A stretch of 64,000 nt of DNA from IMG/VR virus record IMGVR_UViG_3300042359_000853, positions 124,001 through 188,000 of that record. The stretch is one strand, 5' to 3'. The notes under the pieces were generated by a model that was not told where the DNA came from, did not search any database, and saw only the letters and a program-made list of their open reading frames with translations. Made by a program: the position numbers and the translations under genes. This document shows positions 5,407 to 51,605 of this stretch, piece by piece (the stretch's first letter is position 1; each line of letters opens with the position of its first letter).

Positions 5407-6330
5407 ATGAATACTATCTATAATTTTAAGAACTGGATTTCAGAATCAAAGTTGATAAACTTTTCACTTTGGGTATCAAACTTAACCGAGAAGGATCCTT
5501 CACTTTTGGATATTATTGATGAATATATCGAGGATAAAGATCCTACAATTGGATTAGAAAATCTTCTAGATACATTGAATAGCAGCCAAAAAGAAAATCT
5601 TCGTAAAAGAATAGAGGATAAACTATCCAAAGATTCACCTAAGCAGGTTACTGCGTCCATTCAGTCTATAGATCCTATTAGGCAAAAAACACTCTTCAAA
5701 CTTTTCGTAAAAACACTATCTTTTATTGATGGTATTGAGGTAGAAAAAAAACCAAAGAGGGATTGGCTTGTTTATTTTACAACAAAAAAGATCTGGAGAG
5801 AAAAGTTATTAAATCTCTCTACTAGAATAACTTCTATCAATCAAGAAGTTGAAAAAATACCAGGAGATCAAAAATGGGTAAAAGCTTTCTGGGGAGTAAA
5901 AAATGACGGACTTTTTTGCTATGGTTTTTATACAAAATCTGAATTTTACCCTATACAAGAGGTAAAATTTACAGGAAATTTTTCTAGGTATATATCTTCG
6001 TTGGGTGCTAAAATACTCTGGGAAATAAAAAGAGATTTTATGGAGGTCACTCCCCAAAACCTACTTCTTCTTGGAAAAATTAAAACTTCAGTTGATGGGT
6101 TTGATTTTCCAAGTAGTGATAAGTTTTCTCTATGGGAGAAGCACCTTTTACATTTCGGTTGGTATGGACTAGGTGTTTGGAGTAGTAGAGAAATCGACCC
6201 TTCTTCATTTGAGAAAATAAAGGAAGAAATAAAGGAAAAATTGAGAAGTTATAGGTGGTCGAATAAGGTAAAGATCTCACTTAGAGCCGAAGAGTTTTGG
6301 ATACATCTTTACATTCAGATTAAACAATAA
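5407..6330 (+). CDS. Hypothetical protein with N-terminal capsid-targeting-like motif
   Basis: Begins MNTIYNFKNWISES. Confidence 0.55.
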   Translation: MNTIYNFKNWISESKLINFSLWVSNLTEKDPSLLDIIDEYIEDKDPTIGLENLLDTLNSSQKENLRKRIEDKLSKDSPKQVTASIQSIDPIRQKTLFKLFVKTLSFIDGIEVEKKPKRDWLVYFTTKKIWREKLLNLSTRITSINQEVEKIPGDQKWVKAFWGVKNDGLFCYGFYTKSEFYPIQEVKFTGNFSRYISSLGAKILWEIKRDFMEVTPQNLLLLGKIKTSVDGFDFPSSDKFSLWEKHLLHFGWYGLGVWSSREIDPSSFEKIKEEIKEKLRSYRWSNKVKISLRAEEFWIHLYIQIKQ

Positions 6331-6348
6331 CTTATTTTCCCATACAAG

Positions 6349-7122
6349 ATGATTATGGAACTAGTTCGTCTTATCAAAAGTCTTGTAAGAGGTAATAAAG
6401 ATCTAGATTTAGGTCAATTACCCTCCCGTGGTTTGTTTTATCCTGAAGATTTCTCGATTAAAATCAAAAGAGCATCTTCAGAGCAGATCGTTCACTATGA
6501 AACCAATTTCGTAGAAAAAGATATGTTTTCTATTATTGAGTCTATTAAACGTGTAGTAGAAGCAAACGCTGTTTTTCCAGAAAATTATAATTTCAGATAC
6601 CTTAAAGTTATTGATCTTATCTGGGTATTTTTGGAAATTGTTAAATTTACACAGGATAAAAAAATAAACATCAACTATTTTGATAGTGATTCGTCACTTG
6701 TAAAGGAAGTTGAGATCTCTAATGAAAGTTTCAACTACTTTAATTTTTCAAAATTTGAGAGTTTTTACAACGCTGAAGAAAAAATCTTCGAGATGCAGGG
6801 TTACCGATTTTCGTTACCTTCTATTGGCGTTGAATCAGATTTACTTAAATATCTTAACTCGAAAAGTGCAAAAAAATCCGGAAGAGATCTAACAGATATG
6901 AACTACAACTTCATTTTCTTTCTGGGTATGAAAGATAGTATTACAAAAAAAGAAATAGAAAATCTAATTACTATTTTCAATGATGATTTAGATAAAAAAG
7001 AGATGGAAAAAATCGAAGCAATTATCGAAGAGTTTTCCAAGTCTATTAAATATACCTTGAAAATAGGTAAAAAAGTAATCGATCTTCAGTCAAAGATTCA
7101 ACTCAAAGAAATATTCAGATGA
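6349..7122 (+). CDS. Putative baseplate hub assembly protein (T4 gp26/gp51-like)
   Basis: LPSRGLFYP motif near N-terminus and later FSLPSIG; size fits. Confidence 0.45.
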   Translation: MIMELVRLIKSLVRGNKDLDLGQLPSRGLFYPEDFSIKIKRASSEQIVHYETNFVEKDMFSIIESIKRVVEANAVFPENYNFRYLKVIDLIWVFLEIVKFTQDKKININYFDSDSSLVKEVEISNESFNYFNFSKFESFYNAEEKIFEMQGYRFSLPSIGVESDLLKYLNSKSAKKSGRDLTDMNYNFIFFLGMKDSITKKEIENLITIFNDDLDKKEMEKIEAIIEEFSKSIKYTLKIGKKVIDLQSKIQLKEIFR

Positions 7123-7182
7123 ACTATATAAATAAAATTAGAAAAGGCGGTTGAAGTTTTTTCTAATTTTATATATATCTTA

Positions 7183-10100
7183 ATGAATTTTACGATTGAG
7201 TGGTTTCAGTACATGACCTCAGATCTGGGTAATCCCAGAGTTTTTTCGATAAATAGTTTTCCGACTGCTAAAATCGCGGTCTCGATAGAAAGTAGCATCT
7301 TTCGTCTGTGGATAAATTCAGGCATTCGGTTTCAAGAGCCTGTTTCTCTAATACTTAACAATTGGACACACTTCGCTATTGTTTATACAAACGGTTCAAT
7401 AAAAATCTATAAAAACGGTCAAAAAATAGGAAATACCATTGAATATTATTCTGGTATGATCACTGATTATGATGATAAACTTTACATCGGAACTGATCTC
7501 GAAGAAGATTCTTATTTTTCTGGAAGATTATCAAATTTTAGATGGACGCAAGATGAAGTGTATTCATCAAACTTCAATCCATTGGCACAAAATTACGATG
7601 TATTAGCTGATACGATTTTATTATTGAAATTTGATGATATCAATGATTTTGTTTATGATAGCTCAGATACTGGCAAAGACACTTATGGATTCACTCTTTC
7701 TTGGAGCTCTACGAGTCCTATTGGTGGAAGTGGTTCAGTTGTTTTCAACGGTATTGATGGATATCTATATGTAGAACCGGTTGATGATTTTGATTTTTCT
7801 GCCGCTAGTATAACACCAACACAGACACCAACTCAAACCTTGACACCGACACCATCTCTAAGTATAGTTGCAACAAGTTCTACAACAACTACAACAACCA
7901 CGACTACTTCAACTTCTACTACTTCAACAACTACTTTAGAGCCAAGAGTAAATTATACAAGTAGAGTAAAATTTTTGTATAATAAAATAACTAAAATAGC
8001 TAGACGTGGTAAAGATTACTACTTCGAATGGGAACTGTTAGTTGATGAATCCTTAAAGCAAAAAGAATTAGGACTACTATCAGATGTTATGTTGAAATAC
8101 TTTGGTATAAACTGGGACAGATATCCGACCTTGGAAGATTTCAAGAAAAAATCTTGGCCACATATAAGATCTGTTACCGAAGGAGTGCAGAATGTTGAGC
8201 TTAAAAAAATATCAGATGCAAAAGGTGTTTACCAAATAGGTTGGGATTTCTATCTCGTATCTAACAACTATAGTATTGGACAAATCAAGGAACTTTTTGA
8301 GGATGGTAAGGAGATATTGAGAGTTTCTACACTTCTACAAATAGAAGATTTAACTTCAGCTACCTCAAGTATTTACGAAAAATATACCACTGGCATAGAT
8401 CTACTGAAATCAGATTATTTACTTATTTCACCTACACCCACCCCTACACAAACACCTACACCAACCGTAACGGTCACTCCTACAAAAACACCAACTAGAA
8501 CTCCAACACCAACTAGAACTATGACACCGACGGTCACTCAAACTCCAACAGTGACCGCAACACCAACTGTAACACCAACTGTAACATCAACTCTGACACC
8601 CACAGTTACACCATCTGTAACTGAAACGCCCACACAAACCTCAACTGTAACACCAACACAAACCGTAACACCAACCGAAACTTCTACTCAAACACCTACT
8701 CAAACACCAACTATTACACCTTCTGTGACTTCAACTATCACACCTACCGTTACATCAACACCAACAGAAACACCCACTCAAACATCGAGTGAGACTCCTA
8801 CCTCTACCGTTACACCTACTTTAACTGTTACACCGACTAGGACCGTAACACCGACCAATACACAAACACCTACAACCACACCAACTTCAACAATAACAGA
8901 AGGGTCGATAGCTTCGGGTGCTTTCTTCTACTTTGATCCAGGTAATACATCTTCTTATAGTGGCTCAGGAACTACTCTAAATGACATTAGTGGTAATGGT
9001 AATAACGGCTCTATATTCGGAAGTCCAGTTCATACATCTGGTGCGGGTGGATACTTCACCTTTGATGGTGTTAATGATTACATTTTGAGTCCAGACATTT
9101 ATTTCGGAGCTACCGAAACACATACTATTGAAGTTTGGATACGTCCTACCGCTGTGGATGATTGTATATGGTCCGATCTTGGACAGCCTACAATAAATGA
9201 TGGATATCATTTTGCCGGGGCACAAATATTACAAACAGGACCATTCAATCAAATCATTACTTCTTTGTGGAATGGAACTGCTGTAACTAGAGTAGTCAAT
9301 GGTGCGGGTAGTTATCTTAATACCTGGAAGCAAGTAGTTAGAGTGTATAACGGTAGTGTATTAACATCATATCTCGATGGGGTCATCGGTGGAACAATTT
9401 CAATTGCATATGATTCTCCACACAATGATGGAATCACCGATTGGTATTTAGCTTTTGGTGCTATTGATACGACTACTTACTTGGGCTCGGTTGCTGGTTA
9501 TTTTGCTGGTGGATATGGTATTATTCGATATTATAGAAGAGCTCTCTCTGCTAGTGAGGTTCTACAAAATTATAACTCAACGGTCTATAGCTACAACACC
9601 ACTACAACAACTACAACAACTATTGCACCTTCTTCAACACCAACTCCTACTCAAACACCTACTCAAACACCCACTTCTAGTCAAACACCAACCACCACAC
9701 CAACATCAAGTATAACAAACACACCAACTCAAACTCCTACAAATACTCCTTCTGTTACAACAACATCGGCTCCTGTTACTCTAGGGTTGGTTATTGAGTT
9801 GGATGCCTATGATTCTTCCAGCTATCCAGGGTCAGGAACAACAGTTTCTAACTTGCGGTCACCTGGAACCTACGATCATACGCTTACGGGCTCATCATTT
9901 ACAACTTTAAATGGTATCAAATGTTTTGACTGTTCATCAGGAACAAAGAGAGTTGTTGTAAATGGAACTGGTCCTCTCCTACCTACTACTGGATATACCT
10001 ATATTACTTGGGGTAGATTGAAAAACGATACCAGTGGATTTAGAACTTTACTTTACACAAATTCTCCTAAATATACACCAATAACTATCCCCGATGGTTC

Positions 10101-13395: not shown

Positions 13396-13403
13396 TTTTT
13401 TTA

Positions 13404-14276: not shown

Positions 14277-14298
14277 AAGTTTATTTTTATCTACTCAG

Positions 14299-14306
14299 CA
14301 AATATA
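14299..14306 (-). promoter_or_regulatory. Bacteroidota primary-sigma -7 element (TATATTTG)
   Basis: Matches TAnnTTTG, upstream of 13404..14276. Confidence 0.6.
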
Positions 14307-14336
14307 GAGAGGAATGAATGGAGTTGTATATTAAAT

Positions 14337-15793: not shown

Positions 15794-15837
15794 TTGTTAT
15801 TTTATGATTTTATCTTAAAAGGTTGCGAACAAAAAAG

Positions 15838-15869
15838 AAAAAAAACCTGGACAGAATCCAGGTTTTTTT
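15838..15869. terminator. Intrinsic terminator hairpin (bidirectional geometry)
   Basis: AAAAAAAACCTGGA-CAGAA-TCCAGGTTTTTTT. Confidence 0.85.
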
Positions 15870-15870
15870 C

Positions 15871-17058: not shown

Positions 17059-17074
17059 AGTTCGTTTTTTTTTA

Positions 17075-17106
17075 CAAAGATAAGAAGATTTTTGGTAGAA
17101 AACAAA
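17075..17106 (-). promoter_or_regulatory. Bacteroidota primary-sigma promoter TTTG-N20-TATCTTTG
   Basis: Both elements with canonical spacing upstream of the MoxR gene. Confidence 0.75.
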
Positions 17107-17124
17107 TATTTAATGAAAATATTT

Positions 17125-17487: not shown

Positions 17488-17493
17488 GATTTT

Positions 17494-18490: not shown

Positions 18491-18507
18491 AAATATTTTT
18501 TACAAGG

Positions 18508-22957: not shown

Positions 22958-23196
22958 TCCTCTACTGATTTGTAGAGCTCTGGATCAAGAGAATCACCAA
23001 CTTGAAGAAGTATATCTTGTGTGAGTTCCAATTTTATCGAAGGATCACTCTCATTTTTTAGCATCTCAAGTTGAGATTTAATGATATTTTTACTATCATC
23101 ATCCAGTTCTGGTCTATTCTCGATCATTTCAAGAAATGATTCATCGTCCATTTCTTGATTTGATTCATTGAATTTATTAAAATTCACAATTTTCAT
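22939..23196 (-). CDS. Small acidic protein with capsid-targeting-like N-terminus
   Basis: MKIVNFNKFNES; late-type motif at 23202-23213. Confidence 0.65.
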   Translation of the reverse strand: MKIVNFNKFNESNQEMDDESFLEMIENRPELDDDSKNIIKSQLEMLKNESDPSIKLELTQDILLQVGDSLDPELYKSVEDWLKKK

Positions 23197-34619: not shown

Positions 34620-34814
34620 TTAGATCTGCTCTAACCATTCACTGAATCTTAAAACCTTCCTCTCTGATACCTTTTGTGGAAGTTCTCTGTAATCTACGTC
34701 AGTCCATTCCTTATCGAAAACCCAGTGGTATTTCTTGGGAGCTTTCTTTTTAGAACCCCACTTATTTCTAAGAGCCCAGATAAGTTTATATTGTTTTTTT
34801 GATGTTGCTGGCAT
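34620..34814 (-). CDS. Small basic protein, probable internal/core protein
   Basis: MPATSKKQ..., C-terminal KVLRFSEWLE motif. Confidence 0.6.
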   Translation of the reverse strand: MPATSKKQYKLIWALRNKWGSKKKAPKKYHWVFDKEWTDVDYRELPQKVSERKVLRFSEWLEQI

Positions 34815-37661: not shown

Positions 37662-39773
37662 ATGTTTATTATAGAAAAGGTCTCTAAATTTCTAGAAAAT
37701 ATAGAATATTATTCACAGGATATGCTAAAAGATTTTTATTCTAAATCTTCTGATATTAATACAATTGGATCTTTTGAACTGTATAGAAAATATCTTTCTA
37801 CTATATTTGAAGATTTTCGTATTGAATATCGTGGAGATATCTCGGGACTAGAGGAATTTAGATATTCTAATTCTGTTATTGATAGAGATGGAAAATCAGA
37901 TGTTCGTCATAAAATGGGTTCAGGGGTTTATACCACACCCAATCTTTATCAAGCTCAACAATATGCAGATCAGGTTTTGGGTAAAATATATTTTGTTTTA
38001 ATCAATCAAACCGATGAACTTAGATATTCATCAAAACTTTATTTTTATAGAGATGTCGCTAGTTTTGTAGGGAACCCGAATAGACCACCAAATGGATTTG
38101 ATATAGATAGATTTACAAGACACATGCAAAAACTTGGTAGATCTATTCATGTGAAAAAAATATCAACACAAGATGAAACCGTTCACCCTGTAGAAAATAC
38201 CTGGATACTTGGATCTAAAAAAGATATTTTAGGATTTTCTAGGTTTCTCGATAGTCAAACTCAAAACTTGATTGAAAGAAATATTACTTTTAATGATCTT
38301 GATAAAACAAGCTCGGGTCAAAAAAGAGGTGACATTTTGCTCGGTAAAATAGTTCGAGGTGAAGAAATACCACTCAAACCCGAAGGTGAATCAGGAGTTG
38401 TAATCAAAAGAATTTCAGATATTATCAATAAGAACACCCAAGATATAACTTCAAGAAATTTAATAGCTCCTAAATATACACCCTATGATTCTGTAAAGAT
38501 GAGAGATGTGTTCCTAAAAAGACCAGATTATAAAAAATATACGAATAGTCTAAGGGCCGAAGATGGTGAAGAATATAAATTGAACGATATTGTAAAAACT
38601 TCGGATTTTGGATCTTCCGGTGGAAGTTCATTGGGAACAGAATCTACAATTAAAGTTGAAAGTATTTATTGTTTTTATTTTGCTATTCGACAATTTTTAA
38701 ATAGAGATATTTCAATAACTGATGATATTTCCTACTTTCTTACTTCACCTTCTGTTTTGGATTTTATCAAAACACCTATTCAAGTTACACAAGAAATGCT
38801 GGATAGATTTAGTCAATGGGAAAGTAGTTTTATAGAAACCGTGAATGGTATTAACAGAACAGATAAATACCTTGTTAAAGATAGAAAAAACAATAGTGTT
38901 CTTGATAGTAATAAAAAATATTCCTTTCATCAAATAAACTCTAGAGATGATCTTATTACTTCGTTATCAGACAAATACCGTAGTTTCAATTTAGGTATTC
39001 CAATATCTAAATGGACACCTTCCGATATTTGGTCAGTTGATGTAGAAAGAAAGGATCATATTATTGGTCTTATTAGGGCCTGTAGATCACTCCAAGATCT
39101 CAATAGAATTGTAAATAATTCATTTGATAGATCTGAACTTGTTGGAATTTCTATTAAAAAAATTAAAAGTGGCCAAAATAACTTTAAGATCATTATCAAT
39201 AATGAATCCCCTAAGCCACAATACACTTTCTCGAAAGTCATCATACTTGATAATCCTTTAGAAACACTTAACACTACAATTGTTGTAAATAGAAAATCCG
39301 AAGTATATGGTGATGGTGAAGAGAAAATTGATTTTAGAACCTACGACTCGAATATAAGAAATATAGTAGGAGAAGTTCAGGGTAGTGAAGCTAAATTTGG
39401 AAAAATATCACTAGGTCAAATCAATAAAATGTTGAAAGATTTAGAGATTGGAGAAGTTCCGAACTACGTCGAATTGATGAATCTCGATGAAAAAGATTTA
39501 AGGGAAAAAATTCTAGATATAAATAATAAAATTCTACAAAATTCATCACTCAGTGACTATATTAGGATAAGTAGAGTTCGTTCTGATTCAAAACCTCAGA
39601 CAAAAAGAAGACTTATATCTAAATATCAAGGTCTTTTCCTAGTTTCTACTCTATTAGACAAGTTGTTGGTTAGTAAAGAATCTGTGGATAATGTTCTTCA
39701 AAAAATATTCTATTACGCTCTTGCTATTGAAAATCAAGAATATGAATGCCCTAAATACATTCGTATTATATGA
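37662..39773 (+). CDS. Two-domain protein: N-terminal ADP-ribosyltransferase-like, C-terminal PD-(D/E)XK-like
   Basis: YRG..F..GSGVYTT..A..YA..GKIYFVLI; KWTPSDIW..LVGISIKK. Confidence 0.5.
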   Translation: MFIIEKVSKFLENIEYYSQDMLKDFYSKSSDINTIGSFELYRKYLSTIFEDFRIEYRGDISGLEEFRYSNSVIDRDGKSDVRHKMGSGVYTTPNLYQAQQYADQVLGKIYFVLINQTDELRYSSKLYFYRDVASFVGNPNRPPNGFDIDRFTRHMQKLGRSIHVKKISTQDETVHPVENTWILGSKKDILGFSRFLDSQTQNLIERNITFNDLDKTSSGQKRGDILLGKIVRGEEIPLKPEGESGVVIKRISDIINKNTQDITSRNLIAPKYTPYDSVKMRDVFLKRPDYKKYTNSLRAEDGEEYKLNDIVKTSDFGSSGGSSLGTESTIKVESIYCFYFAIRQFLNRDISITDDISYFLTSPSVLDFIKTPIQVTQEMLDRFSQWESSFIETVNGINRTDKYLVKDRKNNSVLDSNKKYSFHQINSRDDLITSLSDKYRSFNLGIPISKWTPSDIWSVDVERKDHIIGLIRACRSLQDLNRIVNNSFDRSELVGISIKKIKSGQNNFKIIINNESPKPQYTFSKVIILDNPLETLNTTIVVNRKSEVYGDGEEKIDFRTYDSNIRNIVGEVQGSEAKFGKISLGQINKMLKDLEIGEVPNYVELMNLDEKDLREKILDINNKILQNSSLSDYIRISRVRSDSKPQTKRRLISKYQGLFLVSTLLDKLLVSKESVDNVLQKIFYYALAIENQEYECPKYIRII

Positions 39774-42471: not shown

Positions 42472-43409
42472 GCAAATATCTTATTCGCGTAGTTTCTGGT
42501 TTCTCTGCTCAATTGGTCCTGTATTTCTACAAAAGGAATTCCATCTTCTAGAGCTTTTTTATAAATATCTAGATTAGGACCACTGTTGTATCCAGCAACA
42601 GCTAGGTCAAGTCTTTTCGGAAACCTATTTAGATGATCATTCATCATTTTTATATAGATTCTTAAAGATTCTTCTGAATTAGTTCTTAGACCACGACCAC
42701 CATAGGAGTTCCAAGTTCCTATCAAAAACTGACACAGACCCACAGCTCCTGCACTAGATCTTGCCCTAGGATTAAAGTTAGATTCAGTGTAGATTTGTCT
42801 TAGCGCTATAATATAGGGAAGACCTATTGAATTACAATCCCCCTCGAATTTTTTTGCTACTTCTTGGCCTACCACTTCTACGAATTTATTCTTCAAGCTC
42901 TCATCATCAGGTAAAGGATCTCTAGAAGGGGCTTTAGCACCATCAAAAGTGGGAATACCCCCTTTCAGTGGAAGATCAAACTGTCTATTTAATACTGGTG
43001 ATTCAGACTCCTTGCGAACAGGTCCTTCTGGTGGCATTTCAGTTGAGGGTTTTTTTGTAGTAGTAGAAGTTGTTGTTGCTTCTTTGGTTGTAGTTGTTGG
43101 TGTAGTATCTTGTTCTTTTGGTGTTCCGGCTGGTGTTTTCCAGGCCTGAGCTCTAGTTATCACTTTTTTTGGTGAGCCATCTTCTCTTTCATCTGGAAAT
43201 TCAGTATCTAATATGTCGATTGATCTTTGATAAGAGTCTTTGAAATCTTTTCCAGTTATTTGATACCATTTCGTTGAACCCTTTCGTCTTGAGAGCCAAT
43301 GTCCACCTTCTACCTTGTACTCAAAAGGATCGCCAGATCGTGTTTTAATTTCACCTACAGATTCGGTCAGATAGCTATAAAATTGTTCCCAATTATGAAG
43401 TCTTCTCAT
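42468..43409 (-). CDS. Lytic transglycosylase (SLT domain) with T/P linker
   Basis: TESNFNPRARSSAGAVGLCQF, AGYNSGP, ETRNY. Confidence 0.9.
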   Translation of the reverse strand: MRRLHNWEQFYSYLTESVGEIKTRSGDPFEYKVEGGHWLSRRKGSTKWYQITGKDFKDSYQRSIDILDTEFPDEREDGSPKKVITRAQAWKTPAGTPKEQDTTPTTTTKEATTTSTTTKKPSTEMPPEGPVRKESESPVLNRQFDLPLKGGIPTFDGAKAPSRDPLPDDESLKNKFVEVVGQEVAKKFEGDCNSIGLPYIIALRQIYTESNFNPRARSSAGAVGLCQFLIGTWNSYGGRGLRTNSEESLRIYIKMMNDHLNRFPKRLDLAVAGYNSGPNLDIYKKALEDGIPFVEIQDQLSRETRNYANKIFA

Positions 43410-43423
43410 AGATTTGTTTTTTT

Positions 43424-43990
43424 TTATCTAGAATAGTTAGGTGTTCTAGGCCCCTTTTTGCCCTCTTTTTCAACCTTTCTTTTACGAGCAACAGATGCCT
43501 TTTTTTGTTTTTTTGTCATTTTAGCTGCTACTCTTACCTTACGACATTTTGGATATCCACCCCTCGACGCATCATCTCTACCACATGGTGGATGTGATCC
43601 ATCTGGATTTGTTTTAGAAATATCAACCCACTTTTCTTTAAACCACTTATCTAGACCACCGTGAGTATCTGAATAAGACCGTTTTTTTTCAAAGAACTGA
43701 GAATAGGATAGAATGTTATCTATAGATTCCTGTGTATTTTCTATTTGTTCTAGTTTATCGTAGTATTTCGGATCTTCCATCAGATGATCAGTAGCTATTT
43801 CTCTAGCAATACTCTGGTCATCGGTGTGCTCCATTTCAACAGAAATACCCCTTTCTAGTTGCTTGTCGATCGTCTGATCTTCAATAGGAAGATTGTGTTT
43901 CTTCTTGATATCTGCTAGAGTTTTACCATCGGATAGACCACCTGGTATTTTATCTTCTAAAAAAGATTGATATTTTAGAACGTCTTTCAT
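43424..43990 (-). CDS. DUF5661-like domain + basic C-terminal domain
   Basis: GISVEMEHT..AREIATDHLMEDPKYYDKL; GLDKWFKEKWVDI..PCGR..YPKCR. Confidence 0.7.
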   Translation of the reverse strand: MKDVLKYQSFLEDKIPGGLSDGKTLADIKKKHNLPIEDQTIDKQLERGISVEMEHTDDQSIAREIATDHLMEDPKYYDKLEQIENTQESIDNILSYSQFFEKKRSYSDTHGGLDKWFKEKWVDISKTNPDGSHPPCGRDDASRGGYPKCRKVRVAAKMTKKQKKASVARKRKVEKEGKKGPRTPNYSR

Positions 43991-44778
43991 TTTTTGGATC
44001 TTGATTTTTTCTTACCCTTTTTCCAGCGACCACCCTTTTCTTTGTATCTTTTAGCTGCTGCTCCTACAGCATAGGCTGAAGGCCAAACTTCGTATCTTGA
44101 TTTGGCCCAACTCTTACAAGAAGCCCAAAGAGATGGATTGAGAGGTATGTTTTTCTCTAATAAAAAACTATATCCAACACTTTCATTATGTTGTATGTAA
44201 AGTTTCAGCTCATCTTGAATAAACCCAACCGCCTCTTCTATTCCAGAAAAGTATAACTCTTCAAATTCATCGTCTAAGTCTTCGAGATTAGTAGAGAATA
44301 GTTTATGTATTCTCACTAGACCTTCTTCACGATTTTCATCTATGTTGATAACCCACTCATAATAATAATCAAGATCGAGTTCATCGCTAGTATATCTAAC
44401 TTTCACAACAATATCATCATCTTGCATTTCCCAATCGAATTTAGATTCAAGCCCTGAAAAAAGTTCAGAAAATTCAATCATTTTTTCTTTTAGATAATTA
44501 ATATCTTGAGATATATCTTCATTTATTTGATAAAATTGAGAAAATTTGTAAACAATACCCTCTTCTATCTGTGATTGAACTTGGGTATCTAAAATTTCAT
44601 ATTCATCTATATCGGGAAGAAGAGCTAATTTACTACCAGAATCCCAATCTACAAAAATACTTCCCATATCATCAATATAACTTATTTTTCCCTCATCACC
44701 ACTTCTAAGTTTAGTATAGGGATCTTCCAGTCGTATAATTCTTACTCTTTTTCCTATTAAATTGTCTTTTTCTTTCAT
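43987..44778 (-). CDS. DUF4314-like N-terminus + acidic middle + basic WPSAYA domain
   Basis: LEDPY..GDEG..IDDMGSIFVDWDSGSKLAL; AKSRYEVWPSAYA..YKEKGG. Confidence 0.7.
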   Translation of the reverse strand: MKEKDNLIGKRVRIIRLEDPYTKLRSGDEGKISYIDDMGSIFVDWDSGSKLALLPDIDEYEILDTQVQSQIEEGIVYKFSQFYQINEDISQDINYLKEKMIEFSELFSGLESKFDWEMQDDDIVVKVRYTSDELDLDYYYEWVINIDENREEGLVRIHKLFSTNLEDLDDEFEELYFSGIEEAVGFIQDELKLYIQHNESVGYSFLLEKNIPLNPSLWASCKSWAKSRYEVWPSAYAVGAAAKRYKEKGGRWKKGKKKSRSKK

Positions 44779-44831
44779 ATCTGTATGTATATATATATTT
44801 TTTGAAAAATAGTAATTTTATATATAAACAA

Positions 44832-45518: not shown

Positions 45519-45550
45519 TTTATATATACATAAAAATAAAAACTTCTACT

Positions 45551-46282
45551 ATGTTCAAACCAAATACCAATAACTATAGAACAAAATATTCTAAAATATC
45601 TCAATTTCATGATTTTACTGATAACATCTCATCTGAAAAAGATGATTTAGAAAGTGTAAAAAGAAGTTATGATCAAGATCATGATTCAGATTATGAGCTA
45701 CCTAATCTCTTCAAGTATAAATACAACCGTGTAACTCGAAAGATAGATGATAAAACGAAAGCTGAAGTTTTAGATGAGTTAGAAGAGATGCCAAATCCAA
45801 AAAAAGAAAAAGAATATACATTAGAACTTGAAAATTTAACTTCATTTGAGGATTTCGCAGATACACCGTCAAATGAAGTGAATGAAGGACCAACTTCCTA
45901 TATGTTTTTCAATAATCTTAAACTTATTCATAAACTTGTTAACGAAATGCTTACTTACGACCAAGAAGTAGTAAACTCTATTTTAGATCACGGTCACAAC
46001 TGGGCCGAAGATCATATGTCAGTAGCAAAAGAAGCTATTTCTCATGTAAGAAACTATTTTGTTGGTGAAGTTGATGCTATCTCCGAATCTTACGAAGGTA
46101 ACTATATGTTTTTCGGAAATCTAGTTTGTATTTCTGATATGATTGAAGAGATTATGGATAGAGATCCAAATAAAATTGACGTAGAGCTTAAAGAAAAACA
46201 CGACTGGGCTGAAGATCATGTCTCAGCCGCTAAAGAAAATGTTACACAAGTTTATGATTTTCTAAAAAATGAAATTAAATAA
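45551..46282 (+). CDS. Protein with tandem HxWAEDH helical repeat
   Basis: Two copies of YMFFxNL...HxWAEDHxSxAKE. Confidence 0.7.
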   Translation: MFKPNTNNYRTKYSKISQFHDFTDNISSEKDDLESVKRSYDQDHDSDYELPNLFKYKYNRVTRKIDDKTKAEVLDELEEMPNPKKEKEYTLELENLTSFEDFADTPSNEVNEGPTSYMFFNNLKLIHKLVNEMLTYDQEVVNSILDHGHNWAEDHMSVAKEAISHVRNYFVGEVDAISESYEGNYMFFGNLVCISDMIEEIMDRDPNKIDVELKEKHDWAEDHVSAAKENVTQVYDFLKNEIK

Positions 46283-46285
46283 GAT

Positions 46286-47707
46286 ATGATTGATAAATAT
46301 TCCCAGTTTTTAGCACAAAAACTCTTATTAGAATCTGAAATCAAATATTCTGATGGTTTTAGAAAGATATTATCTGATATTGGTGACCCAGTAAGTAAAA
46401 CACTATCTTCTCTGGAAAATCAAGATATTAAAACGAATGTTAATTTTATTGATATTCTCAAAGATGATAAAGAGCAATTATCGTTTATTCAAGATAAAAA
46501 AGCTTCAACTCTTTTAAGTAAACTCAAAAATGAAATAGATGTAACTTGGAATGGACAGGGTGGAATACTCAAGAACAACGCGGATAATGAAGATGTTTTT
46601 TCAGCTCTTGGATATGTTAGACCTGAATCCGGTAATCTTCCAAGACCAGCTTCTACACAAACCAGAGGAAAATTATTGAGAGATACGATTTCACCTAAAA
46701 GTGGTAAAATCTATGTTCTTGTAAAGTTTGGTGATATGGAAACAGTTCTCAATAAAGAGTTCTTAAATTTTGTTGATAGATCCGATGAGATCTGGACCCA
46801 ATCAGTTAGACAACCCATGCGTGTAGGAAGAGCAGTGACTGCTCTATTACAAAATGCACCTGTGAAACACACTTCGGTTGAAATTGCTGATTTTGTAAAT
46901 AGATATAAAACAAAAGTTGATGAACTAAATGACGTATTTAGATTTATAGAAGTTGTAAGTGGTGATGATATAGCTAAGTGGTATCATGTAGAAAACTATG
47001 AAGAAAAATCGGGTGGTTCAGAACTTCACCGATCATGTATGGCAAGAAAATCAGCAGGTGTCTTTGAAATCTATACCAAGAATCCAGAAGTTTGTCAGTT
47101 AATTATTCAAAAAAGTGAGAGTGATCCCGACAAAATATCCGCTAGAGCTCTTCTGTGGACTTTGAATAGTGGAAAAAAGTTTATGGATAGAGTTTATTTT
47201 AATGATCCTCAGTCTATTGAGTTATTTAGAAGTTATTGTAAAGAAAATAATATATGGGCTAAATATAATAATAATAGCGGAGCTTTTTCATCTGCTATTA
47301 ATCCCGAAAATGGATCTAGAGAAGAGATCGAAATAGAAGTGGTTCTTGAATCGAGGAAGTACCGTCAGTTTCCCTATATGGATACACTGAAGTTTTTTCA
47401 TCCGAAAAAAGCAATTCTAGACAACTCACATGAGGATGATCCGAACTGGTATAAATTAGAAGACACCGCTGGTGATTATATAAGTCAAGAAGATCAGGGG
47501 TGTGATAGGTGCTACGGTGAAGATTATGTTGATTGTTGGGAATGTGATGGAACGGCTTATTCTAGTTGTGATAATTGTGACGGAGACGGTAAAGTTGAAG
47601 ATGAAGATGGAACAAAAGTTGAATGTGATGTATGCAATGGTAGTGGCAGAATCAATTGTGATACTTGTGATGGGGATGGAAGACTTACTTGTCCTGAATG
47701 TGGTTAA
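46286..47707 (+). CDS. SCM-RALLW-MDRVY family protein, copy 2, with C-terminal DnaJ-type zinc finger
   Basis: RSCMARK..ARALLW..FMDRVY..FPYMDTLKF; five CxxCxG repeats plus a terminal CPEC. Confidence 0.75.
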   Translation: MIDKYSQFLAQKLLLESEIKYSDGFRKILSDIGDPVSKTLSSLENQDIKTNVNFIDILKDDKEQLSFIQDKKASTLLSKLKNEIDVTWNGQGGILKNNADNEDVFSALGYVRPESGNLPRPASTQTRGKLLRDTISPKSGKIYVLVKFGDMETVLNKEFLNFVDRSDEIWTQSVRQPMRVGRAVTALLQNAPVKHTSVEIADFVNRYKTKVDELNDVFRFIEVVSGDDIAKWYHVENYEEKSGGSELHRSCMARKSAGVFEIYTKNPEVCQLIIQKSESDPDKISARALLWTLNSGKKFMDRVYFNDPQSIELFRSYCKENNIWAKYNNNSGAFSSAINPENGSREEIEIEVVLESRKYRQFPYMDTLKFFHPKKAILDNSHEDDPNWYKLEDTAGDYISQEDQGCDRCYGEDYVDCWECDGTAYSSCDNCDGDGKVEDEDGTKVECDVCNGSGRINCDTCDGDGRLTCPECG

Positions 47708-47709
47708 GA

Positions 47710-49435: not shown

Positions 49436-49440
49436 ATTGT

Positions 49441-51099
49441 TTAGTCAAATTTGAATTTTATAGTGCCGGTCTCAAATACAATAGTAGGTTTGAAACCCGT
49501 ATCGTCAAAAAGTTTTTTGTAGGTTTCAAGCTCTCTTTTCACCGTTAGGATAGGAGTTTCATCTACTGGAAGCAATAGATAGAAGTTTTCATCATCGGTA
49601 TAAACCTTTTTTGAGTTGAATAACCTTTGTCTTTTCATCTTCATAATCAGTGAGCCATATTTAGCTGAGATAGATGGATCTAGACCTACTTTTCTAGCTA
49701 TACGAAGATTATTCCAATTTACACCGAGAGTTGCTCTTGCTAATCTTTCGAGAAAAGAAATGTTTTGCATTTCAGTATGTGTATGCTCTGAGAAATATCC
49801 AACAGAGATGTTTGTACATTCTGGTATAAGATCCATAAATGATGCTGAATCGGTGAACACACCGGTGTTATCTAACCTCATCTGCATACCATTCGCGTTA
49901 AGTTCATCACATAGACTTTGAGCAAAGACGTTTGAGCAACAAGTTTGAGAAAGTTGAGAAGTGATTACTGAGAAATAGTTTCTTCTATCAAAAGAAATAC
50001 ATTTTTTCATACCTCTAAGATGTTGTATAGTATCAAAGTTTTCAGCTACTTTACTAGATCCAATAGCCCCGCGCTCTTCACCAATAAAGAAGTAATACAC
50101 ACCAGGTATTCTGTTAGCAATCATATAAAGAAGTATAGTAACACCAGCCTTATCATCAGCTCCAAGTATAGATGTTCCATCAGTTACAAAAATTTCATCT
50201 CCGTTCTCGGTATAGGAAAGAACTCTAACTGCACTTTTAGTTCTTGATGCTGTGTCAGTGTGACAAGTAAACATGGTATCAGAATTTCCGATGACTAAGT
50301 AGTAGTTTCCCCACTGGTCCTTTTGTAGACCAGGAACAGGTAGATATTCCATGACTTCTTCTTCGTGTCCATGTGGATAAGTCTCAGTTGTAAGAGATAA
50401 GAAAGTAGATCGAACGTCTTTTGGATCATATTGAAATGGACGAACCGTTACTGGATCCCCTTTAGCTACTGAATAATATTTACTACCATAACTAGATCCG
50501 TAACCATAAGATGTTCCGGTTCCCCAACTTTTGTTGCCACTTTTAGATGACCACGAACCCGAACCACCATACAATTCAACATCTGAACCATCGTAATAAT
50601 CATAATCATCATCACGAGCACCTTTAGAAGTAGAAGTTGATCCAGAAGTTTTGCTCAAACTAGGAATAAGAGGTTTTTTCTGAACCCAACGATTATAATA
50701 GATCAAAAAGTTCTGAACAAGGGAGTCTAATTGTTTTTTGGTGTATTTAGAAGAAAAATCCGGATTTTTACCCATGAAATATTTTAGAAGAGCACTCACA
50801 CCAATCACACCGGTCTTTTCTCCAAGTACGACATCAAAATAATCAGGTGAAGTAGAGCAGTCTAAAGTTTTCAGATTTATCTTGTTTTCATACTTATCAT
50901 TTTGGTGTAGATCGAAGAAAAACTCACAAACAACAATTGTTTCATCCAACGACTTTGATGTTTTATCATTAACTTTGGCTTTATCATAGGATAAATCTGA
51001 TAGATCGCCGAGCATCACCCAAAATCCATCTGTGAAATTAATTAGTGGCCCGGATTCTCCACCTTCTAACATTTCTATTTTTTCTTTTTCTTTTTGCAT
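49441..51099 (-). CDS. M28/M20-like zinc hydrolase, copy 1, with extra N-terminal domain
   Basis: YPHGHE, FTCHTDT, LGADDKAG, GEERG, SFDRR, FTDS, PECTNISVGY..EH. Confidence 0.85.
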   Translation of the reverse strand: MQKEKEKIEMLEGGESGPLINFTDGFWVMLGDLSDLSYDKAKVNDKTSKSLDETIVVCEFFFDLHQNDKYENKINLKTLDCSTSPDYFDVVLGEKTGVIGVSALLKYFMGKNPDFSSKYTKKQLDSLVQNFLIYYNRWVQKKPLIPSLSKTSGSTSTSKGARDDDYDYYDGSDVELYGGSGSWSSKSGNKSWGTGTSYGYGSSYGSKYYSVAKGDPVTVRPFQYDPKDVRSTFLSLTTETYPHGHEEEVMEYLPVPGLQKDQWGNYYLVIGNSDTMFTCHTDTASRTKSAVRVLSYTENGDEIFVTDGTSILGADDKAGVTILLYMIANRIPGVYYFFIGEERGAIGSSKVAENFDTIQHLRGMKKCISFDRRNYFSVITSQLSQTCCSNVFAQSLCDELNANGMQMRLDNTGVFTDSASFMDLIPECTNISVGYFSEHTHTEMQNISFLERLARATLGVNWNNLRIARKVGLDPSISAKYGSLIMKMKRQRLFNSKKVYTDDENFYLLLPVDETPILTVKRELETYKKLFDDTGFKPTIVFETGTIKFKFD

Positions 51100-51107
51100 G
51101 GTTTTAT

Positions 51108-51605
51108 TTATTTTTGATTGGTATAGTTTTTAAAACTTAATATTTTTGATTCGTTTTTGGGTGTCTCTTCAACTGATATTTTAATAATACTTGGAAGATT
51201 TTTATACATATCGCAAAATTGATCTAGGCTATCAAAGTAGCAAAATATATATTTATGGATATCAATCTCGTCGAGAATGTATCTCACACCACCATGAAGA
51301 AGGTAACCACCCACATTCCTTCTTTTCAATAGATAACCTTTGAAATAAATTCTCTCCTTACCAAAACCACCATATCCACGTGAAAAATCATAGTGGGTAA
51401 AAGTTTTAGAAGGTTCTCCAAACTCAATACCTTTAAGATCTCCAGTAAGTAGATTTAGTTTATTTATTTCATCTTTTTCAAAGTGAGCCCTATATCTTGA
51501 TTGATTAAGAAAATCAGTTATCTCAATCTCGTTGGGAAGTTCTAAAATTGTTGCATTTTTAGAGTCTTTTATCGACAAACGTTCTAAAGTAGAAATATTT
51601 TTCAT
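51108..51605 (-). CDS. Hypothetical protein
   Basis: ORF; C-terminal NESKILSFKNY motif. Confidence 0.6.
   Translation of the reverse strand: MKNISTLERLSIKDSKNATILELPNEIEITDFLNQSRYRAHFEKDEINKLNLLTGDLKGIEFGEPSKTFTHYDFSRGYGGFGKERIYFKGYLLKRRNVGGYLLHGGVRYILDEIDIHKYIFCYFDSLDQFCDMYKNLPSIIKISVEETPKNESKILSFKNYTNQK

What the first reader, a model, noticed from the sequence alone, without database searches (positions are those of the whole stretch)
5407..51605. Capsid-targeting-like motif tags a large set of candidate injected enzymes
A motif (I/V/L)xx(F/Y/W)xx(F/W)...(L/N/S/T)E recurs, resembling the T4 internal-protein signal MKTYQEFIAE, which gp21 cleaves after Glu. N-terminal copies: MNTIYNFKNWISES (5407), MKIVNFNKFNES (22939), MFIIEKVSKFLE (37662), MRRLHNWEQFYSYLTES (SLT), MKDVLKYQSFLE (43424), MIDKYSQFLAQKLLLES (46286). 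C-terminal copies: VKRFGDF (flavodoxin), VLRFSEWLE (34620), ILSFKNY (51108). Nearly all are in TATATA-driven units. Predicted cargo includes a transglycosylase, a flavodoxin-like protein, an ART/nuclease and a zinc-finger protein. C-terminal and internal use of the signal is unusual.
Basis: partly seen in the sequence, partly recalled or inferred. Interest (0 to 1): 0.8.

Follow-up and report, generated by a model that had tools for sequence, protein, structure and literature searches.

The report
T4-like capsid-targeting tag on phage proteins
An uncultured freshwater jumbo phage with a T4-type head puts a short tag, very like the peptide T4 uses to load proteins into its capsid, on many unrelated proteins, and the same pattern is repeated about 11 times in the phage's own protease-scaffold protein, which suggests how such tags are recognised.

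Summary
The motif is real. Related phages carry it on 7-12% of their proteins; control phages on 0.7%.

It is a portable 11-17 residue leader: hydrophobic-x-x-aromatic-x-x-aromatic-(hydrophobic)-x-Glu. These are the four positions shown experimentally to drive targeting (4, 7) and cleavage (8, 10) in the T4 IPIII tag MKTYQEFIAE.

The phage has a T4-type head:
- a Portal_T4 portal inside the window;
- a Gp23-family capsid gene 39 bases past the window end;
- a gp21-type protease fused to a scaffold that holds 11 tandem YSEY[LI]AE repeats, the same pattern.

The leaders are conserved in orthologues, sit in front of unrelated domains, are absent from the same domains in other phage lineages, and fall only in units driven by the TATATA promoter that also precedes the capsid, portal, protease and sheath genes.

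Two of the three C-terminal copies (g38, g55) are supported by conservation; the "flavodoxin" copy is not. Only the transglycosylase is a recognisable enzyme, and nothing supports an ART or nuclease. Packaging, cleavage and injection are inferred, not shown.

The parts
5407..5445 (+). Leader of g6 (gene 5407-6330, 307 aa, function unknown): MNTIYNFKNWISE|S. It matches Ar-x-x-Ar-I-x-E exactly.
   Evidence: The orthologue in megaphage LR756502 sits in the same gene order after the g3 and g4 homologues and starts MKIKNYIQFIKES. g6 lies in the late operon g4-g7.
23164..23196 (-). Leader of g24 (gene 22939-23196, 85 aa; predicted mature part acidic, pI 4.2): MKIVNFNKFNE|S.
   Evidence: It has its own AATATATA promoter 13 nt upstream. 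Leader-plus-acidic small proteins lie next to the capsid gene in relatives. No homologues were recovered for g24 itself.
37662..37697 (+). Weakest candidate: the N-terminus of g41 (gene 37662-39773, 703 aa, phrog_1462), MFIIEKVSKFLE|N. The first aromatic is replaced by Val.
   Evidence: The L003 homologue lacks the first 200 residues, so conservation could not be tested. TTTATATA promoter upstream.
43362..43409 (-). Leader of g45 (gene 42468-43409, 313 aa; SLT lytic transglycosylase domain at residues 193-313): MRRLHNWEQFYSYLTE|S.
   Evidence: Pfam SLT 3.9e-13; PHROG matches to endolysin and to internal virion protein with endolysin domain. In 14 orthologues at 48-98% identity the leader keeps W7, F10 and [LIV]-x-E16-[AS]. 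Relatives carry other leader subtypes in front of the same GDPFEYKV domain.
43955..43990 (-). Leader of g46 (gene 43424-43990, 188 aa; DUF5661 plus a basic DUF5872-like domain): MKDVLKYQSFLE|D.
   Evidence: The DUF5872 domain begins directly at LDKWFKEKW in other phage lineages and carries a 13-20 aa leader only in this clade. The immuto homologue has a different N-terminus in front of IPGGL.
46286..46333 (+). Leader of g50 (gene 46286-47707, 473 aa; weakly GNAT-like core plus a C-terminal DnaJ-type zinc finger): MIDKYSQFLAQKLLLE|S.
   Evidence: 115 of 120 homologues keep the aromatic pair. In a 59-sequence alignment: position 5 aromatic 100%, position 8 Phe 97%, position 9 I/L 86%, position 11 Glu 83%, Glu16 97%, S/A17 95%. 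In the AF2 model the leader is helix 5-12 at pLDDT 64-69 against 87 overall. 8-15 paralogues per megaphage genome.
34623..34661 (-). C-terminal tag of g38 (gene 34620-34814, 64 aa, pI 9.9): ...KVSE|RKVLRFSEWLEQI.
   Evidence: All 12 homologues keep the aromatic pair at the C-terminus, and 8 of them the full Ar-x-x-Ar-hydrophobic-x-E form (SYVDFLNE, SYIDFINE, NYFDFINE). 11 of the 12 keep a [VIL]-x-E site just before it. Own TTTATATA promoter.
51111..51167 (-). C-terminal extension of g55 (gene 51108-51605, 165 aa): ...ETPKNE|SKILSFKNYTNQK. It has the aromatic pair but no following Glu.
   Evidence: The 52%-identical homologue P0158 keeps ESKILSFKDFT. The two 31%-identical homologues lack this tail and instead start MIKNFYEFITE and MKYIKSYNE, so the tag has moved between termini within one family.
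44518..44553 (-). Internal leader-like segment VYKFSQFYQINE, residues 76-87 of g47 (gene 43987-44778, 263 aa), at the junction between the DUF4314 domain and the rest.
   Evidence: In L012 the part homologous to g47 residues 79-250 is a separate gene that starts MKYLKLFENFIND. The internal copy is therefore best read as a leader made internal by gene fusion.
45596..45637 (+). Possible displaced leader ISQFHDFTDNISSE, residues 16-29 of g49 (gene 45551-46282). Uncertain.
   Evidence: The L003 orthologue keeps YRT.YS.IS.F.DF. Not tested further.
44779..44801 (.). Divergent TATATATA promoter region between the g47-g46-g45 operon (- strand) and g48 (+ strand). Together with the g49 promoter at 45519-45528 it drives the 42.4-47.7 kb cluster of tagged genes.
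   Evidence: Short metatranscriptome contigs cover g45, g46, g47, g49 and g50 at low depth.
59476..61182 (-). g66, a T4-type portal protein (PF07230 Portal_T4; phrog_213), with an AATATATA promoter at about 61205.
61935..62441 (+). g68, a head-closure or head-completion protein (phrog_218).
63948..64000 (-). Right edge of the window. Just beyond it on the same contig lie the Gp23-family major capsid gene (window-equivalent 64039-65697, - strand) and the 709-aa gp21-type protease-scaffold fusion (65772-67901, - strand) with 11 tandem 14-residue repeats Y[SA][EK]Y[LI]AEN.
   Evidence: Locus L090. Protease domain: BLASTP to the immuto prohead protease 1e-15 and to T4 gp21 6e-4; tblastn matches lie under annotated prohead proteases among 722 matching phage records. 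Repeats. 48 unique orthologues carry 9-13 copies each.

Best explanation
The window comes from an uncultured freshwater jumbo phage (contig of at least 227 kb) with T4-type head genes. Many of its late proteins carry an 11-17 residue leader of the form M-x(1-3)-hydrophobic-x-x-aromatic-x-x-aromatic-(hydrophobic)-x-Glu, usually followed by Ser, Ala, Asn, Gly or Asp.

The most likely function is that of the T4 capsid targeting sequence. The aromatic pair binds the tagged protein to the scaffolding core of the assembling prohead. The capsid shell then closes around the core. Finally the gp21-type protease, here fused to the scaffold, cuts after the Glu (hydrophobic residue at P3, Glu at P1) and frees the mature protein inside the head. 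From there it may be ejected with the DNA, or in some cases degraded.

The scaffold part of the protease-scaffold protein consists of about 11 tandem copies of the same pattern (YSEY[LI]AE|N). I therefore infer that the leader works by imitating one scaffold repeat: it would co-assemble with the repeats and be cut at the same kind of site.

The tag is portable. It sits in front of unrelated domains. In g38 and g55 it is at the C-terminus, and in g47 it is internal after a gene fusion.

Shown here: the motif, its enrichment, its conservation, its modularity, the T4-type head genes, the scaffold repeats and the promoter class. Inferred: binding to the core, cleavage, packaging and ejection.
For: 1. 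Match to experimentally defined determinants. In the T4 IPIII CTS (MKTYQEFIAE), residues 4 and 7 matter for targeting and residues 8 and 10 for processing (PMC9026906). The g50 family has an aromatic at position 5 (100%), Phe at 8 (97%), I/L at 9 (86%) and Glu at 11 (83%), which is the same spacing. One homologue starts MKTFTQFIAE. The T4 gp23 maturation site FGSFLTE65|A fits the same pattern.
2. T4-type head machinery. Portal_T4 lies in the window. A Gp23-family capsid gene and a gp21-type protease lie 39 bases and 1.8 kb past its end.
3. Scaffold repeats. There are 11 Ar-x-x-Ar-hydrophobic-x-E units in 709 residues, against 0.0003-0.0004 per internal position elsewhere. They are conserved in 48 unique orthologues and in megaphage LR756504.
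4. N-terminal enrichment.
5. Modularity. The DUF5872 domain carries a leader only in this clade. The GDPFEYKV domain of the g45 family appears behind three leader subtypes. The g55 family has the tag at either end.
6. Selection acts on the protein. Codons vary synonymously, and the motif is kept in a more GC-rich relative, L023.
7. In relatives, small leader-bearing genes sit directly after the capsid gene.
8. All six window leaders are in units driven by the TATATA promoter, which also precedes the capsid, portal, protease and sheath genes. None is among the 19 genes in host-type TAnnTTTG units.
9. The predicted cargo resembles known packaged proteins: a lytic transglycosylase and small very basic proteins like the T4 internal proteins.
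Against: - There is no direct evidence that any of these proteins is in virions or is cleaved.
- Within the window alone, the loose definition gives only 5 against 1.6 expected, and one of those hits (g11, MNWIMSNFKAWDRE) lies in an early-type unit.
- The late-unit association is only marginal (6 of 6, with 42 of 69 genes in such units; p about 0.04).
- A matrix built from relatives' consensus leaders scores the window's leaders poorly. A matrix built from the scaffold repeats gives only a modest N-terminal excess (15 against 4.7 at score 4 or more). The mimicry therefore holds for the residue pattern, not for sequence identity.
- Spacing before the Glu varies (F-L-E, F-N-E, F-I-x-E, or a later L-x-E), so the cleavage register is uncertain.
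- 7-12% of the proteome is a large share to package.
- C-terminal copies are not enriched overall.
- The protease domain scores below the Pfam S77 threshold (17.3 against 27 bits), and its AF2 model was too poor to test the fold.
Confidence: 0.65

Rival explanations
1. The tagged proteins are prohead-core or scaffold accessory proteins, like T4 gp67 and gp68, or ordinary head components. They assemble with the scaffold and are degraded or retained, but they are not cargo injected into the host. The tag works the same way; the fate of the proteins differs.
For: g24 and the relatives' leader-plus-acidic proteins next to the capsid gene resemble the acidic core protein gp67 of T4. The tag pattern equals the scaffold repeat.
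Against: Several tagged proteins have folded domains unlikely to be mere scaffold: an SLT transglycosylase and a confidently folded 450-residue protein with a zinc finger. The small basic proteins resemble injected T4 internal proteins.
Confidence: 0.15
2. The leader is a general N-terminal amphipathic helix with a function unrelated to the capsid. It could be a recognition element for another phage peptidase (the M16 peptidase just upstream of the window, or the two M20-like peptidases g54 and g63), a chaperone or degradation signal, an oligomerisation element or a localisation element.
For: M16 enzymes such as the mitochondrial processing peptidase remove N-terminal amphipathic presequences (general knowledge). 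An M16 gene lies 8 kb upstream of g6. Tags occur on up to 12% of proteins. A homologue of g54 sits beside the capsid gene in relatives.
Against: This does not explain why the pattern coincides with the T4 CTS determinants, why it is the scaffold's repeat unit, or why tagged genes cluster next to the capsid gene and under the late promoter. The leader is acidic, unlike membrane-binding helices or mitochondrial presequences.
Confidence: 0.12
3. The motif reflects a nucleotide-level or translation-level signal at gene starts, for example an A/T-rich unstructured initiation region in a host that does not use Shine-Dalgarno sequences, or a recombination cassette boundary. On this view it is not a protein signal.
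For: The codons for K, Y, I, L, F and N are A/T-rich. The host-type promoters suggest a Bacteroidota host.
Against: Codons differ synonymously between copies (TTT/TTC, AAA/AAG, TAT/TAC, CTA/TTA). The motif survives in a more GC-rich relative with different codons. The fixed 3-residue spacing, the C-terminal and internal copies and the near-absence from A/T-rich control phages all argue against it.
Confidence: 0.03
4. Chance or compositional artefact of a loosely defined motif.
For: The pattern was defined after the fact. Loose versions occur at about 0.2% of internal positions.
Against: Independent sequences show 6- to 15-fold N-terminal excess. The key positions are 83-100% conserved across 59 homologues at 28-79% identity.
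Confidence: 0.02

Closest known systems
Capsid targeting sequence (CTS) of the phage T4 internal proteins IPI, IPII, IPIII and Alt (Mullaney and Black 1996; reviewed in PMC9026906 and PMC3012670)
   Same: A short terminal propeptide placed on otherwise unrelated proteins. Aromatic residues three apart, followed by hydrophobic-x-Glu. T4 IPII and IPIII start MKTYQEFIAE|A. Found together with a gp21-type protease, a gp23-type capsid protein and a gp20-type portal. The cargo genes are variable and partly clustered.
   Different: The host lineage differs (probably Bacteroidota, freshwater) and the head genes are only 26-30% identical to cultured T4-like phages. The protease is fused to the scaffold. 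The tag is far more widespread (7-12% of proteins, against the handful of CTS-bearing head proteins listed for T4). Spacing to the Glu is variable and there are several leader subtypes. There are conserved C-terminal and internal copies. Function has not been tested.
Scaffold protein gp22 and the gp21 cleavage sites of T4
   Same: T4 gp22 starts MLKEQLIAE and contains EWLAEN and several I/L-A-E sites. gp23 is cut after FGSFLTE65. The window phage's scaffold repeats read YSEY[LI]AEN.
   Different: Here the sites form a regular 14-residue tandem array (a 42-nt DNA repeat, 9.6 copies), and the scaffold is one polypeptide with the protease.
Propeptides of head and ejection proteins in the giant phages phiKZ, 201phi2-1 and SPN3US (PMC5694885)
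   Same: Many internal head proteins, paralogue families, N-terminal conservation that exceeds the rest of the protein, and cleavage after Glu by a gp21-related protease.
   Different: Those propeptides are mostly longer than 100 residues, with a small residue at P3 (A/S/G-x-E). Here the leaders are 11-17 residues with a hydrophobic P3 and an aromatic pair.
Phage P1 Dar anti-restriction proteins, and encapsulin cargo-loading peptides
   Same: Short terminal sequences direct cargo into an HK97-fold shell. Encapsulin tags are C-terminal, as in g38 and g55 (general knowledge; P1 paper PMC9024508 was listed but not read in detail).
   Different: No sequence similarity, a different docking partner (shell or other Dar proteins), and no tag removal by a gp21-type protease.

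Membership tests
T4-type capsid targeting sequences (CTS) | A short (10-19 residue) terminal propeptide in front of unrelated mature domains | tested here: met
   Leaders of 11-17 residues precede SLT, DUF5661/DUF5872, a GNAT-like domain with zinc finger, and unknown domains. The same domains occur without a leader in other lineages.
T4-type capsid targeting sequences (CTS) | Targeting determinants equivalent to IPIII residues 4 and 7 (Tyr and Phe, three apart) | tested here: met
   Definition from PMC9026906. Aromatic pair present in g6, g24, g45, g46 and g50. 100% and 97% conserved in the g50 family. g41 lacks the first aromatic.
T4-type capsid targeting sequences (CTS) | Processing determinants equivalent to IPIII residues 8 and 10 (hydrophobic P3, Glu P1) | tested here: met
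   I-S-E in g6, L-T-E in g45, L-L-E in g50. g24, g41 and g46 use a shorter register, F-N-E or F-L-E, with the aromatic itself at P3. Glu is 83-97% conserved. Whether cleavage occurs was not tested.
T4-type capsid targeting sequences (CTS) | The phage encodes a gp21-family prohead protease with a scaffold core, a gp23-family capsid protein and a gp20-family portal | tested here: met
   PF07230 and PF07068 hits. Protease domain matches: 1e-15 to the immuto prohead protease, 6e-4 to T4 gp21, and annotated proteases under the tblastn matches (722 matching records).
T4-type capsid targeting sequences (CTS) | Late expression together with the head genes | tested here: met
   By promoter class only. 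All leader genes lie in [AT][AT]TATATA units, and the same element precedes the capsid, portal, protease-scaffold and sheath genes. Timing was not measured.
T4-type capsid targeting sequences (CTS) | The protein is incorporated into proheads through the tag, and the tag is removed by the prohead protease | not testable with these tools
   Needs virion proteomics with N-terminomics, or fusion-packaging assays.
T4-type capsid targeting sequences (CTS) | Common descent of the leader with the T4 CTS | tested here: inconclusive
   The peptides are too short for a homology test. P0113 (MKTFTQFIAE) shares 7 of 10 residues with T4. The T4 CTS scores 9.1 with the scaffold-repeat matrix.
phiKZ/SPN3US-type long propeptides | Propeptides mostly over 100 residues, with a cleavage motif having Ala, Ser or Gly at P3 | tested here: not met
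   Definition from PMC5694885. Here the leaders are 11-17 residues with a hydrophobic P3.
Sec, Tat or lipoprotein signal peptides | A basic n-region followed by an uninterrupted hydrophobic h-region of about 10 or more residues | tested here: not met
   The leaders have no hydrophobic stretch and are rich in Glu, Asp and Asn (sequence lists).
Peptidase S77 (T4 gp21 prohead protease), for the 709-aa protein | Sequence membership with the conserved GE-x-x-HP and SSR blocks | tested here: met
   The GEFDHP and VSSRAAG blocks align with the immuto protease. Pfam PF03420 scores only 17.3 bits against a cut-off of 27. tblastn matches fall under annotated prohead proteases in T4-like cyanophages, Campylobacter phages and E. 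coli jumbo phages.
Peptidase S77 (T4 gp21 prohead protease), for the 709-aa protein | Herpesvirus/gp21 protease fold | tested here: inconclusive
   The AF2 model of residues 1-200 reached only pLDDT 48, so no fold search was run on it.

The most novel reading that the evidence does not exclude
The capsid-targeting tag is a single copy of the scaffold's own repeat unit. Cargo would enter the prohead by co-assembling with the tandem YSEY[LI]AE repeats of a protease-scaffold fusion and would be released by the same cut that dismantles the scaffold. If so, this also explains the T4 CTS, whose partner in the core the T4 reviews read here do not identify. The tag would work at either terminus or internally, and one phage clade would use it to load tens of different proteins, up to a tenth of its proteome, into the head.
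Probability: 0.3. Interest if true: 0.8.

Novelty: new variant of a known kind. Interest (0 to 1): 0.68.

Why it matters
The T4 capsid targeting sequence is the textbook example of how a virus loads chosen proteins into its capsid, and it is used as an engineering tool. The reviews read here say only that it binds the scaffolding core. They do not name a binding partner, and they describe related tags only in close relatives of T4.

This window shows the same four-position pattern in a distant, uncultured and apparently abundant clade. More than 150 IMG/VR contigs carry the protease-scaffold gene, and the clade includes 460-735 kb megaphages.

Three consequences follow:
- A scaffold built of repeats of the same pattern gives a concrete, testable model for tag recognition.
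- A sequence rule becomes available to predict the packaged, and possibly injected, proteins of uncultured jumbo phages. These may include counter-defence factors.
- A tag that tolerates N-terminal, C-terminal and internal positions would be useful for protein packaging.

No paper describing such tags in these phages was found in four full-text searches. That is not proof that none exists.

Tried and rejected
- Megablast of 20 kb against cultured and deposited phages found almost nothing.
- g54 as the prohead protease: rejected. It is an M20, peptidase-T-like metallopeptidase also found in the early regions of small Klebsiella phages.
- tblastn of the immuto head proteins against the window gave no hits. 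The head genes were found only through the Pfam annotations of the source contig.
- A matrix trained on relatives' consensus leaders (MKYIKLFENF type) scores the window's own leaders poorly, at most 6.8 bits. The window's leaders are divergent variants.
- A matrix built from the scaffold repeats gives only a modest N-terminal excess.
- A census for C-terminal enrichment was negative.
- The g29 'flavodoxin' C-terminal copy: rejected.
- Protein Atlas searches gave no function for g6 or g41 and only viral-only families.
- The fold search for g50 gave only weak GNAT-like matches (best E 4e-3, TM 0.33-0.37). An ART fold is not supported.
- The AF2 model of the protease domain was too poor to use.
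- The PDB sequence search for the protease domain found nothing.
- PAU and MaF61, cultured distant relatives through g3, show no such leaders.
- The metatranscriptome runs are kept only as contigs, so they give no transcription start sites or timing.
- Only 10 kb on each side of the window was read from the 227-kb contig, so there is no genome-wide census for this phage.

Full report
**What the window is.** The 64-kb window has about 33% G+C. It is identical to positions 124,001-188,000 of the 227,583-bp contig IMGVR_UViG_3300042359_000853 (JGI Ga0453949_0000001). It also occurs in a 110-kb contig and in many other freshwater assemblies. Megablast against deposited phages finds almost nothing. 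At protein level the nearest genomes are the 460-735 kb uncultured megaphages LR745206 and LR756500-LR756504. More distant are the Prevotella Lak phages, Sphingomonas phage PAU and Flavobacterium phage MaF61.

I called 69 genes. Most are not structural:
- topoisomerase II subunits;
- two Dam-type methyltransferases and one FkbM-type;
- a glutamine-synthetase-like protein;
- a MoxR-like ATPase with a VWA/metallopeptidase partner;
- an SbcD-like phosphoesterase, an epimerase and an ABC-type ATPase;
- two M20-like peptidases;
- an IS607-type resolvase with TnpB, and homing endonucleases.

All quoted peptides are present. Five of those matches begin at residues 2-4, where 0.16 would be expected.

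The pattern was defined after the fact, so I tested it on independent sequence:
- Loci around homologues of g46 gave 48 N-terminal matches against 2.3 expected (this includes duplicates and the window's own copies).
- In 347 unique proteins of relatives, the stricter pattern aromatic-x-x-aromatic-hydrophobic-x-Glu occurs 20 times within the first dozen residues against 1.3 expected.
- In 1,445 unique clade proteins, the core pattern starts within the first 8 residues 208 times against 34 expected.
- By a loose definition, 7-12% of clade proteins carry it. The figure is 0.7% for 423 proteins of immuto-like control phages, and none were seen in the PAU and MaF61 samples. The same definition picks out T4 IPII and IPIII.

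Relatives show clearer consensus forms than the window does, such as MKYIKLFENF..., MEHLLLFEDFI.EE and MIKKY..FI.ES. The window's copies are divergent variants, and a matrix trained on the relatives scores them poorly.

**The signal acts on the protein.** Copies differ by synonymous codons. A more GC-rich relative, L023, keeps the motif with different codons. Gene starts are pinned by tightly packed upstream genes.

**The leader is a portable module.**
- The DUF5872 domain begins directly at LDKWFKEKW in dozens of other phages. Only in this clade is it preceded by a 13-20 residue leader.
- The g46 homologue in Flavobacterium phage immuto has a different N-terminus in front of the same IPGGL domain.
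- In the g45 (SLT) family, orthologues at 48-98% identity keep M[RK][RK]L..W.QFY.Y[LIV].E[AS]. Paralogous relatives place other leader subtypes (MKHLKIFEDYEILNE, MEHLLSFGNYESINE) before the same GDPFEYKV domain.
- In the g50 family, 115 of 120 homologues keep the aromatic pair. In 59 aligned sequences at 28-79% identity: position 5 is aromatic in 100%, position 8 is Phe in 97%, position 9 is I/L in 86%, position 11 is Glu in 83%, Glu16 is kept in 97% and S/A17 in 95%.
- The AlphaFold model of g50 (mean pLDDT 87) shows the leader as a short helix, residues 5-12, with lower confidence than the body.
- The g6 orthologue in megaphage LR756502 lies in the same gene order and starts MKIKNYIQFIKES.

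**Comparison with T4.** I read T4 IPII and IPIII from the genome record. Both start MKTYQEFIAE followed by Ala. According to the review PMC9026906, suppressor-substitution experiments place capsid targeting mainly at residues 4 and 7 and processing at residues 8 and 10. Asp at position 10 blocks processing but not targeting. That is exactly aromatic-x-x-aromatic-hydrophobic-x-Glu. The T4 capsid protein's maturation site, FGSFLTE65|A, fits the same pattern. The T4 scaffold gp22 starts MLKEQLIAE and contains EWLAEN.

**The phage has a T4-type head.**
- g66 (59476-61182, - strand) is a Portal_T4 protein, and g68 is a head-closure protein.
- Thirty-nine bases beyond the window end lies a Gp23-family capsid gene.
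- Next to it is a 709-residue protein. Its first 170 residues align with the annotated prohead protease of phage immuto (30% identity, E = 1e-15, including the GEFDHP and SSR blocks) and with T4 gp21 (E = 6e-4). tblastn matches 722 phage records, and in annotated hits the match lies under a prohead-protease gene. The Pfam S77 score is below threshold.
- Residues 258-432 of this protein contain 11 matches to the pattern, ten of them (residues 300-432) in a regular 14-residue tandem array reading Y[SA][EK]Y[LI]AEN. This array is encoded by a 42-nt DNA repeat.
- The fusion and its 9-13 repeats are conserved in 48 unique orthologues from at least 150 IMG/VR contigs and in megaphage LR756504. The repeats are more degenerate in LR756500.
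- The capsid protein's N-terminus is alignable with the T4 propeptide (L.KW.P.LE). It has a candidate maturation site, YAEYHSINE44|N.

So the tag pattern, the scaffold repeat and the likely cleavage sites coincide. This is the basis for the scaffold-mimicry model. The resemblance is at the level of residue classes. A position matrix built from the repeats gives only a threefold N-terminal excess, although it scores the T4 CTS highly.

**Context.** The element [AT][AT]TATATA is strongly intergenic: 49 of 75 sites lie in 4.6% of the sequence. It precedes the capsid, protease-scaffold, portal and sheath genes, so it is best read as the late promoter.

A second class of upstream element, TAnnTTTG, matches the -7 box of Bacteroidota promoters as I recall it; this was not checked against a source here. 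It precedes the g9-g22 block and a few other genes. That points to early transcription by a Bacteroidota host polymerase. One close g50 homologue is filed under a Flavobacteriaceae MAG.

All six leader genes lie in late-type units, which hold 42 of the 69 genes (p about 0.04). None lies among the 19 genes in early-type units. The one loose-definition hit in an early unit, g11, is within the chance expectation.

In relatives, the genes directly after the capsid gene are small leader-bearing proteins and a homologue of the M20-like peptidase g54. In the window, g45-g47 and g48-g50 form a divergent late cluster of tagged genes. Short freshwater metatranscriptome contigs cover this cluster at low depth.

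**C-terminal and internal copies.** Across the clade, C-terminal copies are not enriched.
- g38 is a 64-residue protein with pI 9.9. All 12 of its homologues keep the aromatic pair at the C-terminus, and 8 of them the full pattern (SYVDFLNE, SYIDFINE, NYFDFINE). It is preceded by a [VIL]-x-E site, kept in 11 of the 12, that could release a mature peptide of about 50 basic residues.
- g55 and its 52%-identical homologue carry an 18-19 residue C-terminal extension, ESKILSFK[ND][YF]T. Two 31%-identical homologues lack it and instead start MIKNFYEFITE and MKYIKSYNE.
- The C-terminus of g29 is not conserved in its homologue.
- g47 has an internal copy at residues 76-87, at a domain junction. In L012 the downstream part is a separate gene with an N-terminal leader, so the internal position results from gene fusion.

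**Cargo.** Only g45 has a recognisable enzyme domain, the SLT lytic transglycosylase. It also matches the PHROG family 'internal virion protein with endolysin domain'. g46 and g38 are small and basic, like T4 internal proteins. g24 is small and acidic, like the T4 core protein gp67. g50 belongs to a virus-only family with 8-15 paralogues per megaphage. It has a weakly GNAT-like core and a DnaJ-type zinc finger. g6 and g41 remain unknown. Nothing supports an ART or a nuclease.

**Verdict.** The motif is real, and it is best explained as a T4-type capsid-targeting and processing tag, in a lineage where it is unusually widespread and where it equals the repeat unit of a protease-scaffold fusion. 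Packaging, cleavage and ejection are inferred. The rivals are: core components rather than injected cargo; another peptidase or another function; a nucleotide-level signal; and chance. They are ranked in the dedicated field.

I found no description of such tags in these phages in four full-text searches. I class the finding as a new variant of a known kind.

Noticed in passing
L090:6047-8176 (window-equivalent 65772-67901, - strand, just outside the window): The prohead protease is fused to a scaffold-like region that carries a 42-nt tandem DNA repeat (9.6 copies), followed by an acidic stretch. The fusion is conserved in at least 150 IMG/VR contigs and in the 460-735 kb megaphages.
   Followed up: yes
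window 49441-51099 (-) and 57792-58883 (+): Two paralogous M20, peptidase-T-like metallopeptidases (phrog_4191). In relatives, the g54 homologue lies two genes downstream of the capsid gene, after the 129-aa leader-bearing gene. They might clear scaffold or propeptide fragments; this is speculative.
   Followed up: partly
L084:7134-8234 (about 1.4 kb upstream of the window start): A 366-aa M16 (insulinase/pitrilysin-type) peptidase next to a RecA/UvsX-like gene. M16 enzymes process N-terminal presequences elsewhere, so it is a possible alternative leader peptidase.
   Followed up: no
window 11109-22231 and the upstream regions of g26, g30 and g63: The upstream elements TAnnTTTG look like the Bacteroidota -7 promoter box. 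They mark an early-type block that contains no tagged genes and suggest a Bacteroidota (Flavobacteriaceae?) host.
   Followed up: partly
window 53445-55180 (+): An IS607-type pair inside the phage genome: a serine resolvase (PF00239) plus TnpB (OrfB_IS605 / Cas12f-like TNB). A TATATA element lies upstream of it.
   Followed up: no
window 62430-63947 (-), 59108-59479 (+); L090:4262-5968: Homing-endonuclease genes (HNH/DUF7487 type and a small one) interrupt the head module between the capsid, head-closure, portal and sheath genes.
   Followed up: no
window 46286-47707 (+): The g50 family is virus-only and has 8-15 copies per megaphage genome. It has invariant S-C-M, R287, W291, D301-R302 and P-Y-x-D motifs and a variable number of CxxCxGxG zinc-finger repeats. 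The model is confident (pLDDT 87), but the fold is only weakly GNAT-like.
   Followed up: partly
L143:13973-14362 and equivalents in other relatives: A 129-aa leader-bearing protein directly after the capsid gene. Its sequence (GVPGSHVVI...) looked to me like an NFACT-R/DUF814 RNA-binding domain. No homologue is present in the window.
   Followed up: no
L009:12480-13427, L010:13300-14238, L012:13141-14091, L015:13148-14092: A family of about 314 residues in relatives ends exactly with AFEQFI[KE]E, a perfect copy of the tag pattern at the extreme C-terminus.
   Followed up: no
L083 (Flavobacterium phage immuto, NC_055915 93215-133460): This cultured T4-like phage has its own recurring N-termini (MKKSQL..II.E.L and ME.NFDLKKFLVENKL), including on small genes between the portal, protease and capsid genes. 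Lineage-specific tags may be common in T4-like phages.
   Followed up: partly
window 7183-11112 (+): A 1309-aa protein with four Laminin_G_3 (ConA-like lectin) stretches and a match to a PHROG family annotated as virion structural protein, probably a fibre or receptor-binding protein. The sub-threshold Pfam hit to a clostridial toxin receptor-binding domain probably reflects only the shared lectin-like fold.
   Followed up: no
window 42400-47800: Two freshwater metatranscriptome runs hold short contigs, some 100% identical, over g45, g46, g47, g49 and g50. This is compatible with transcription in nature, but DNA carry-over cannot be excluded.
   Followed up: partly
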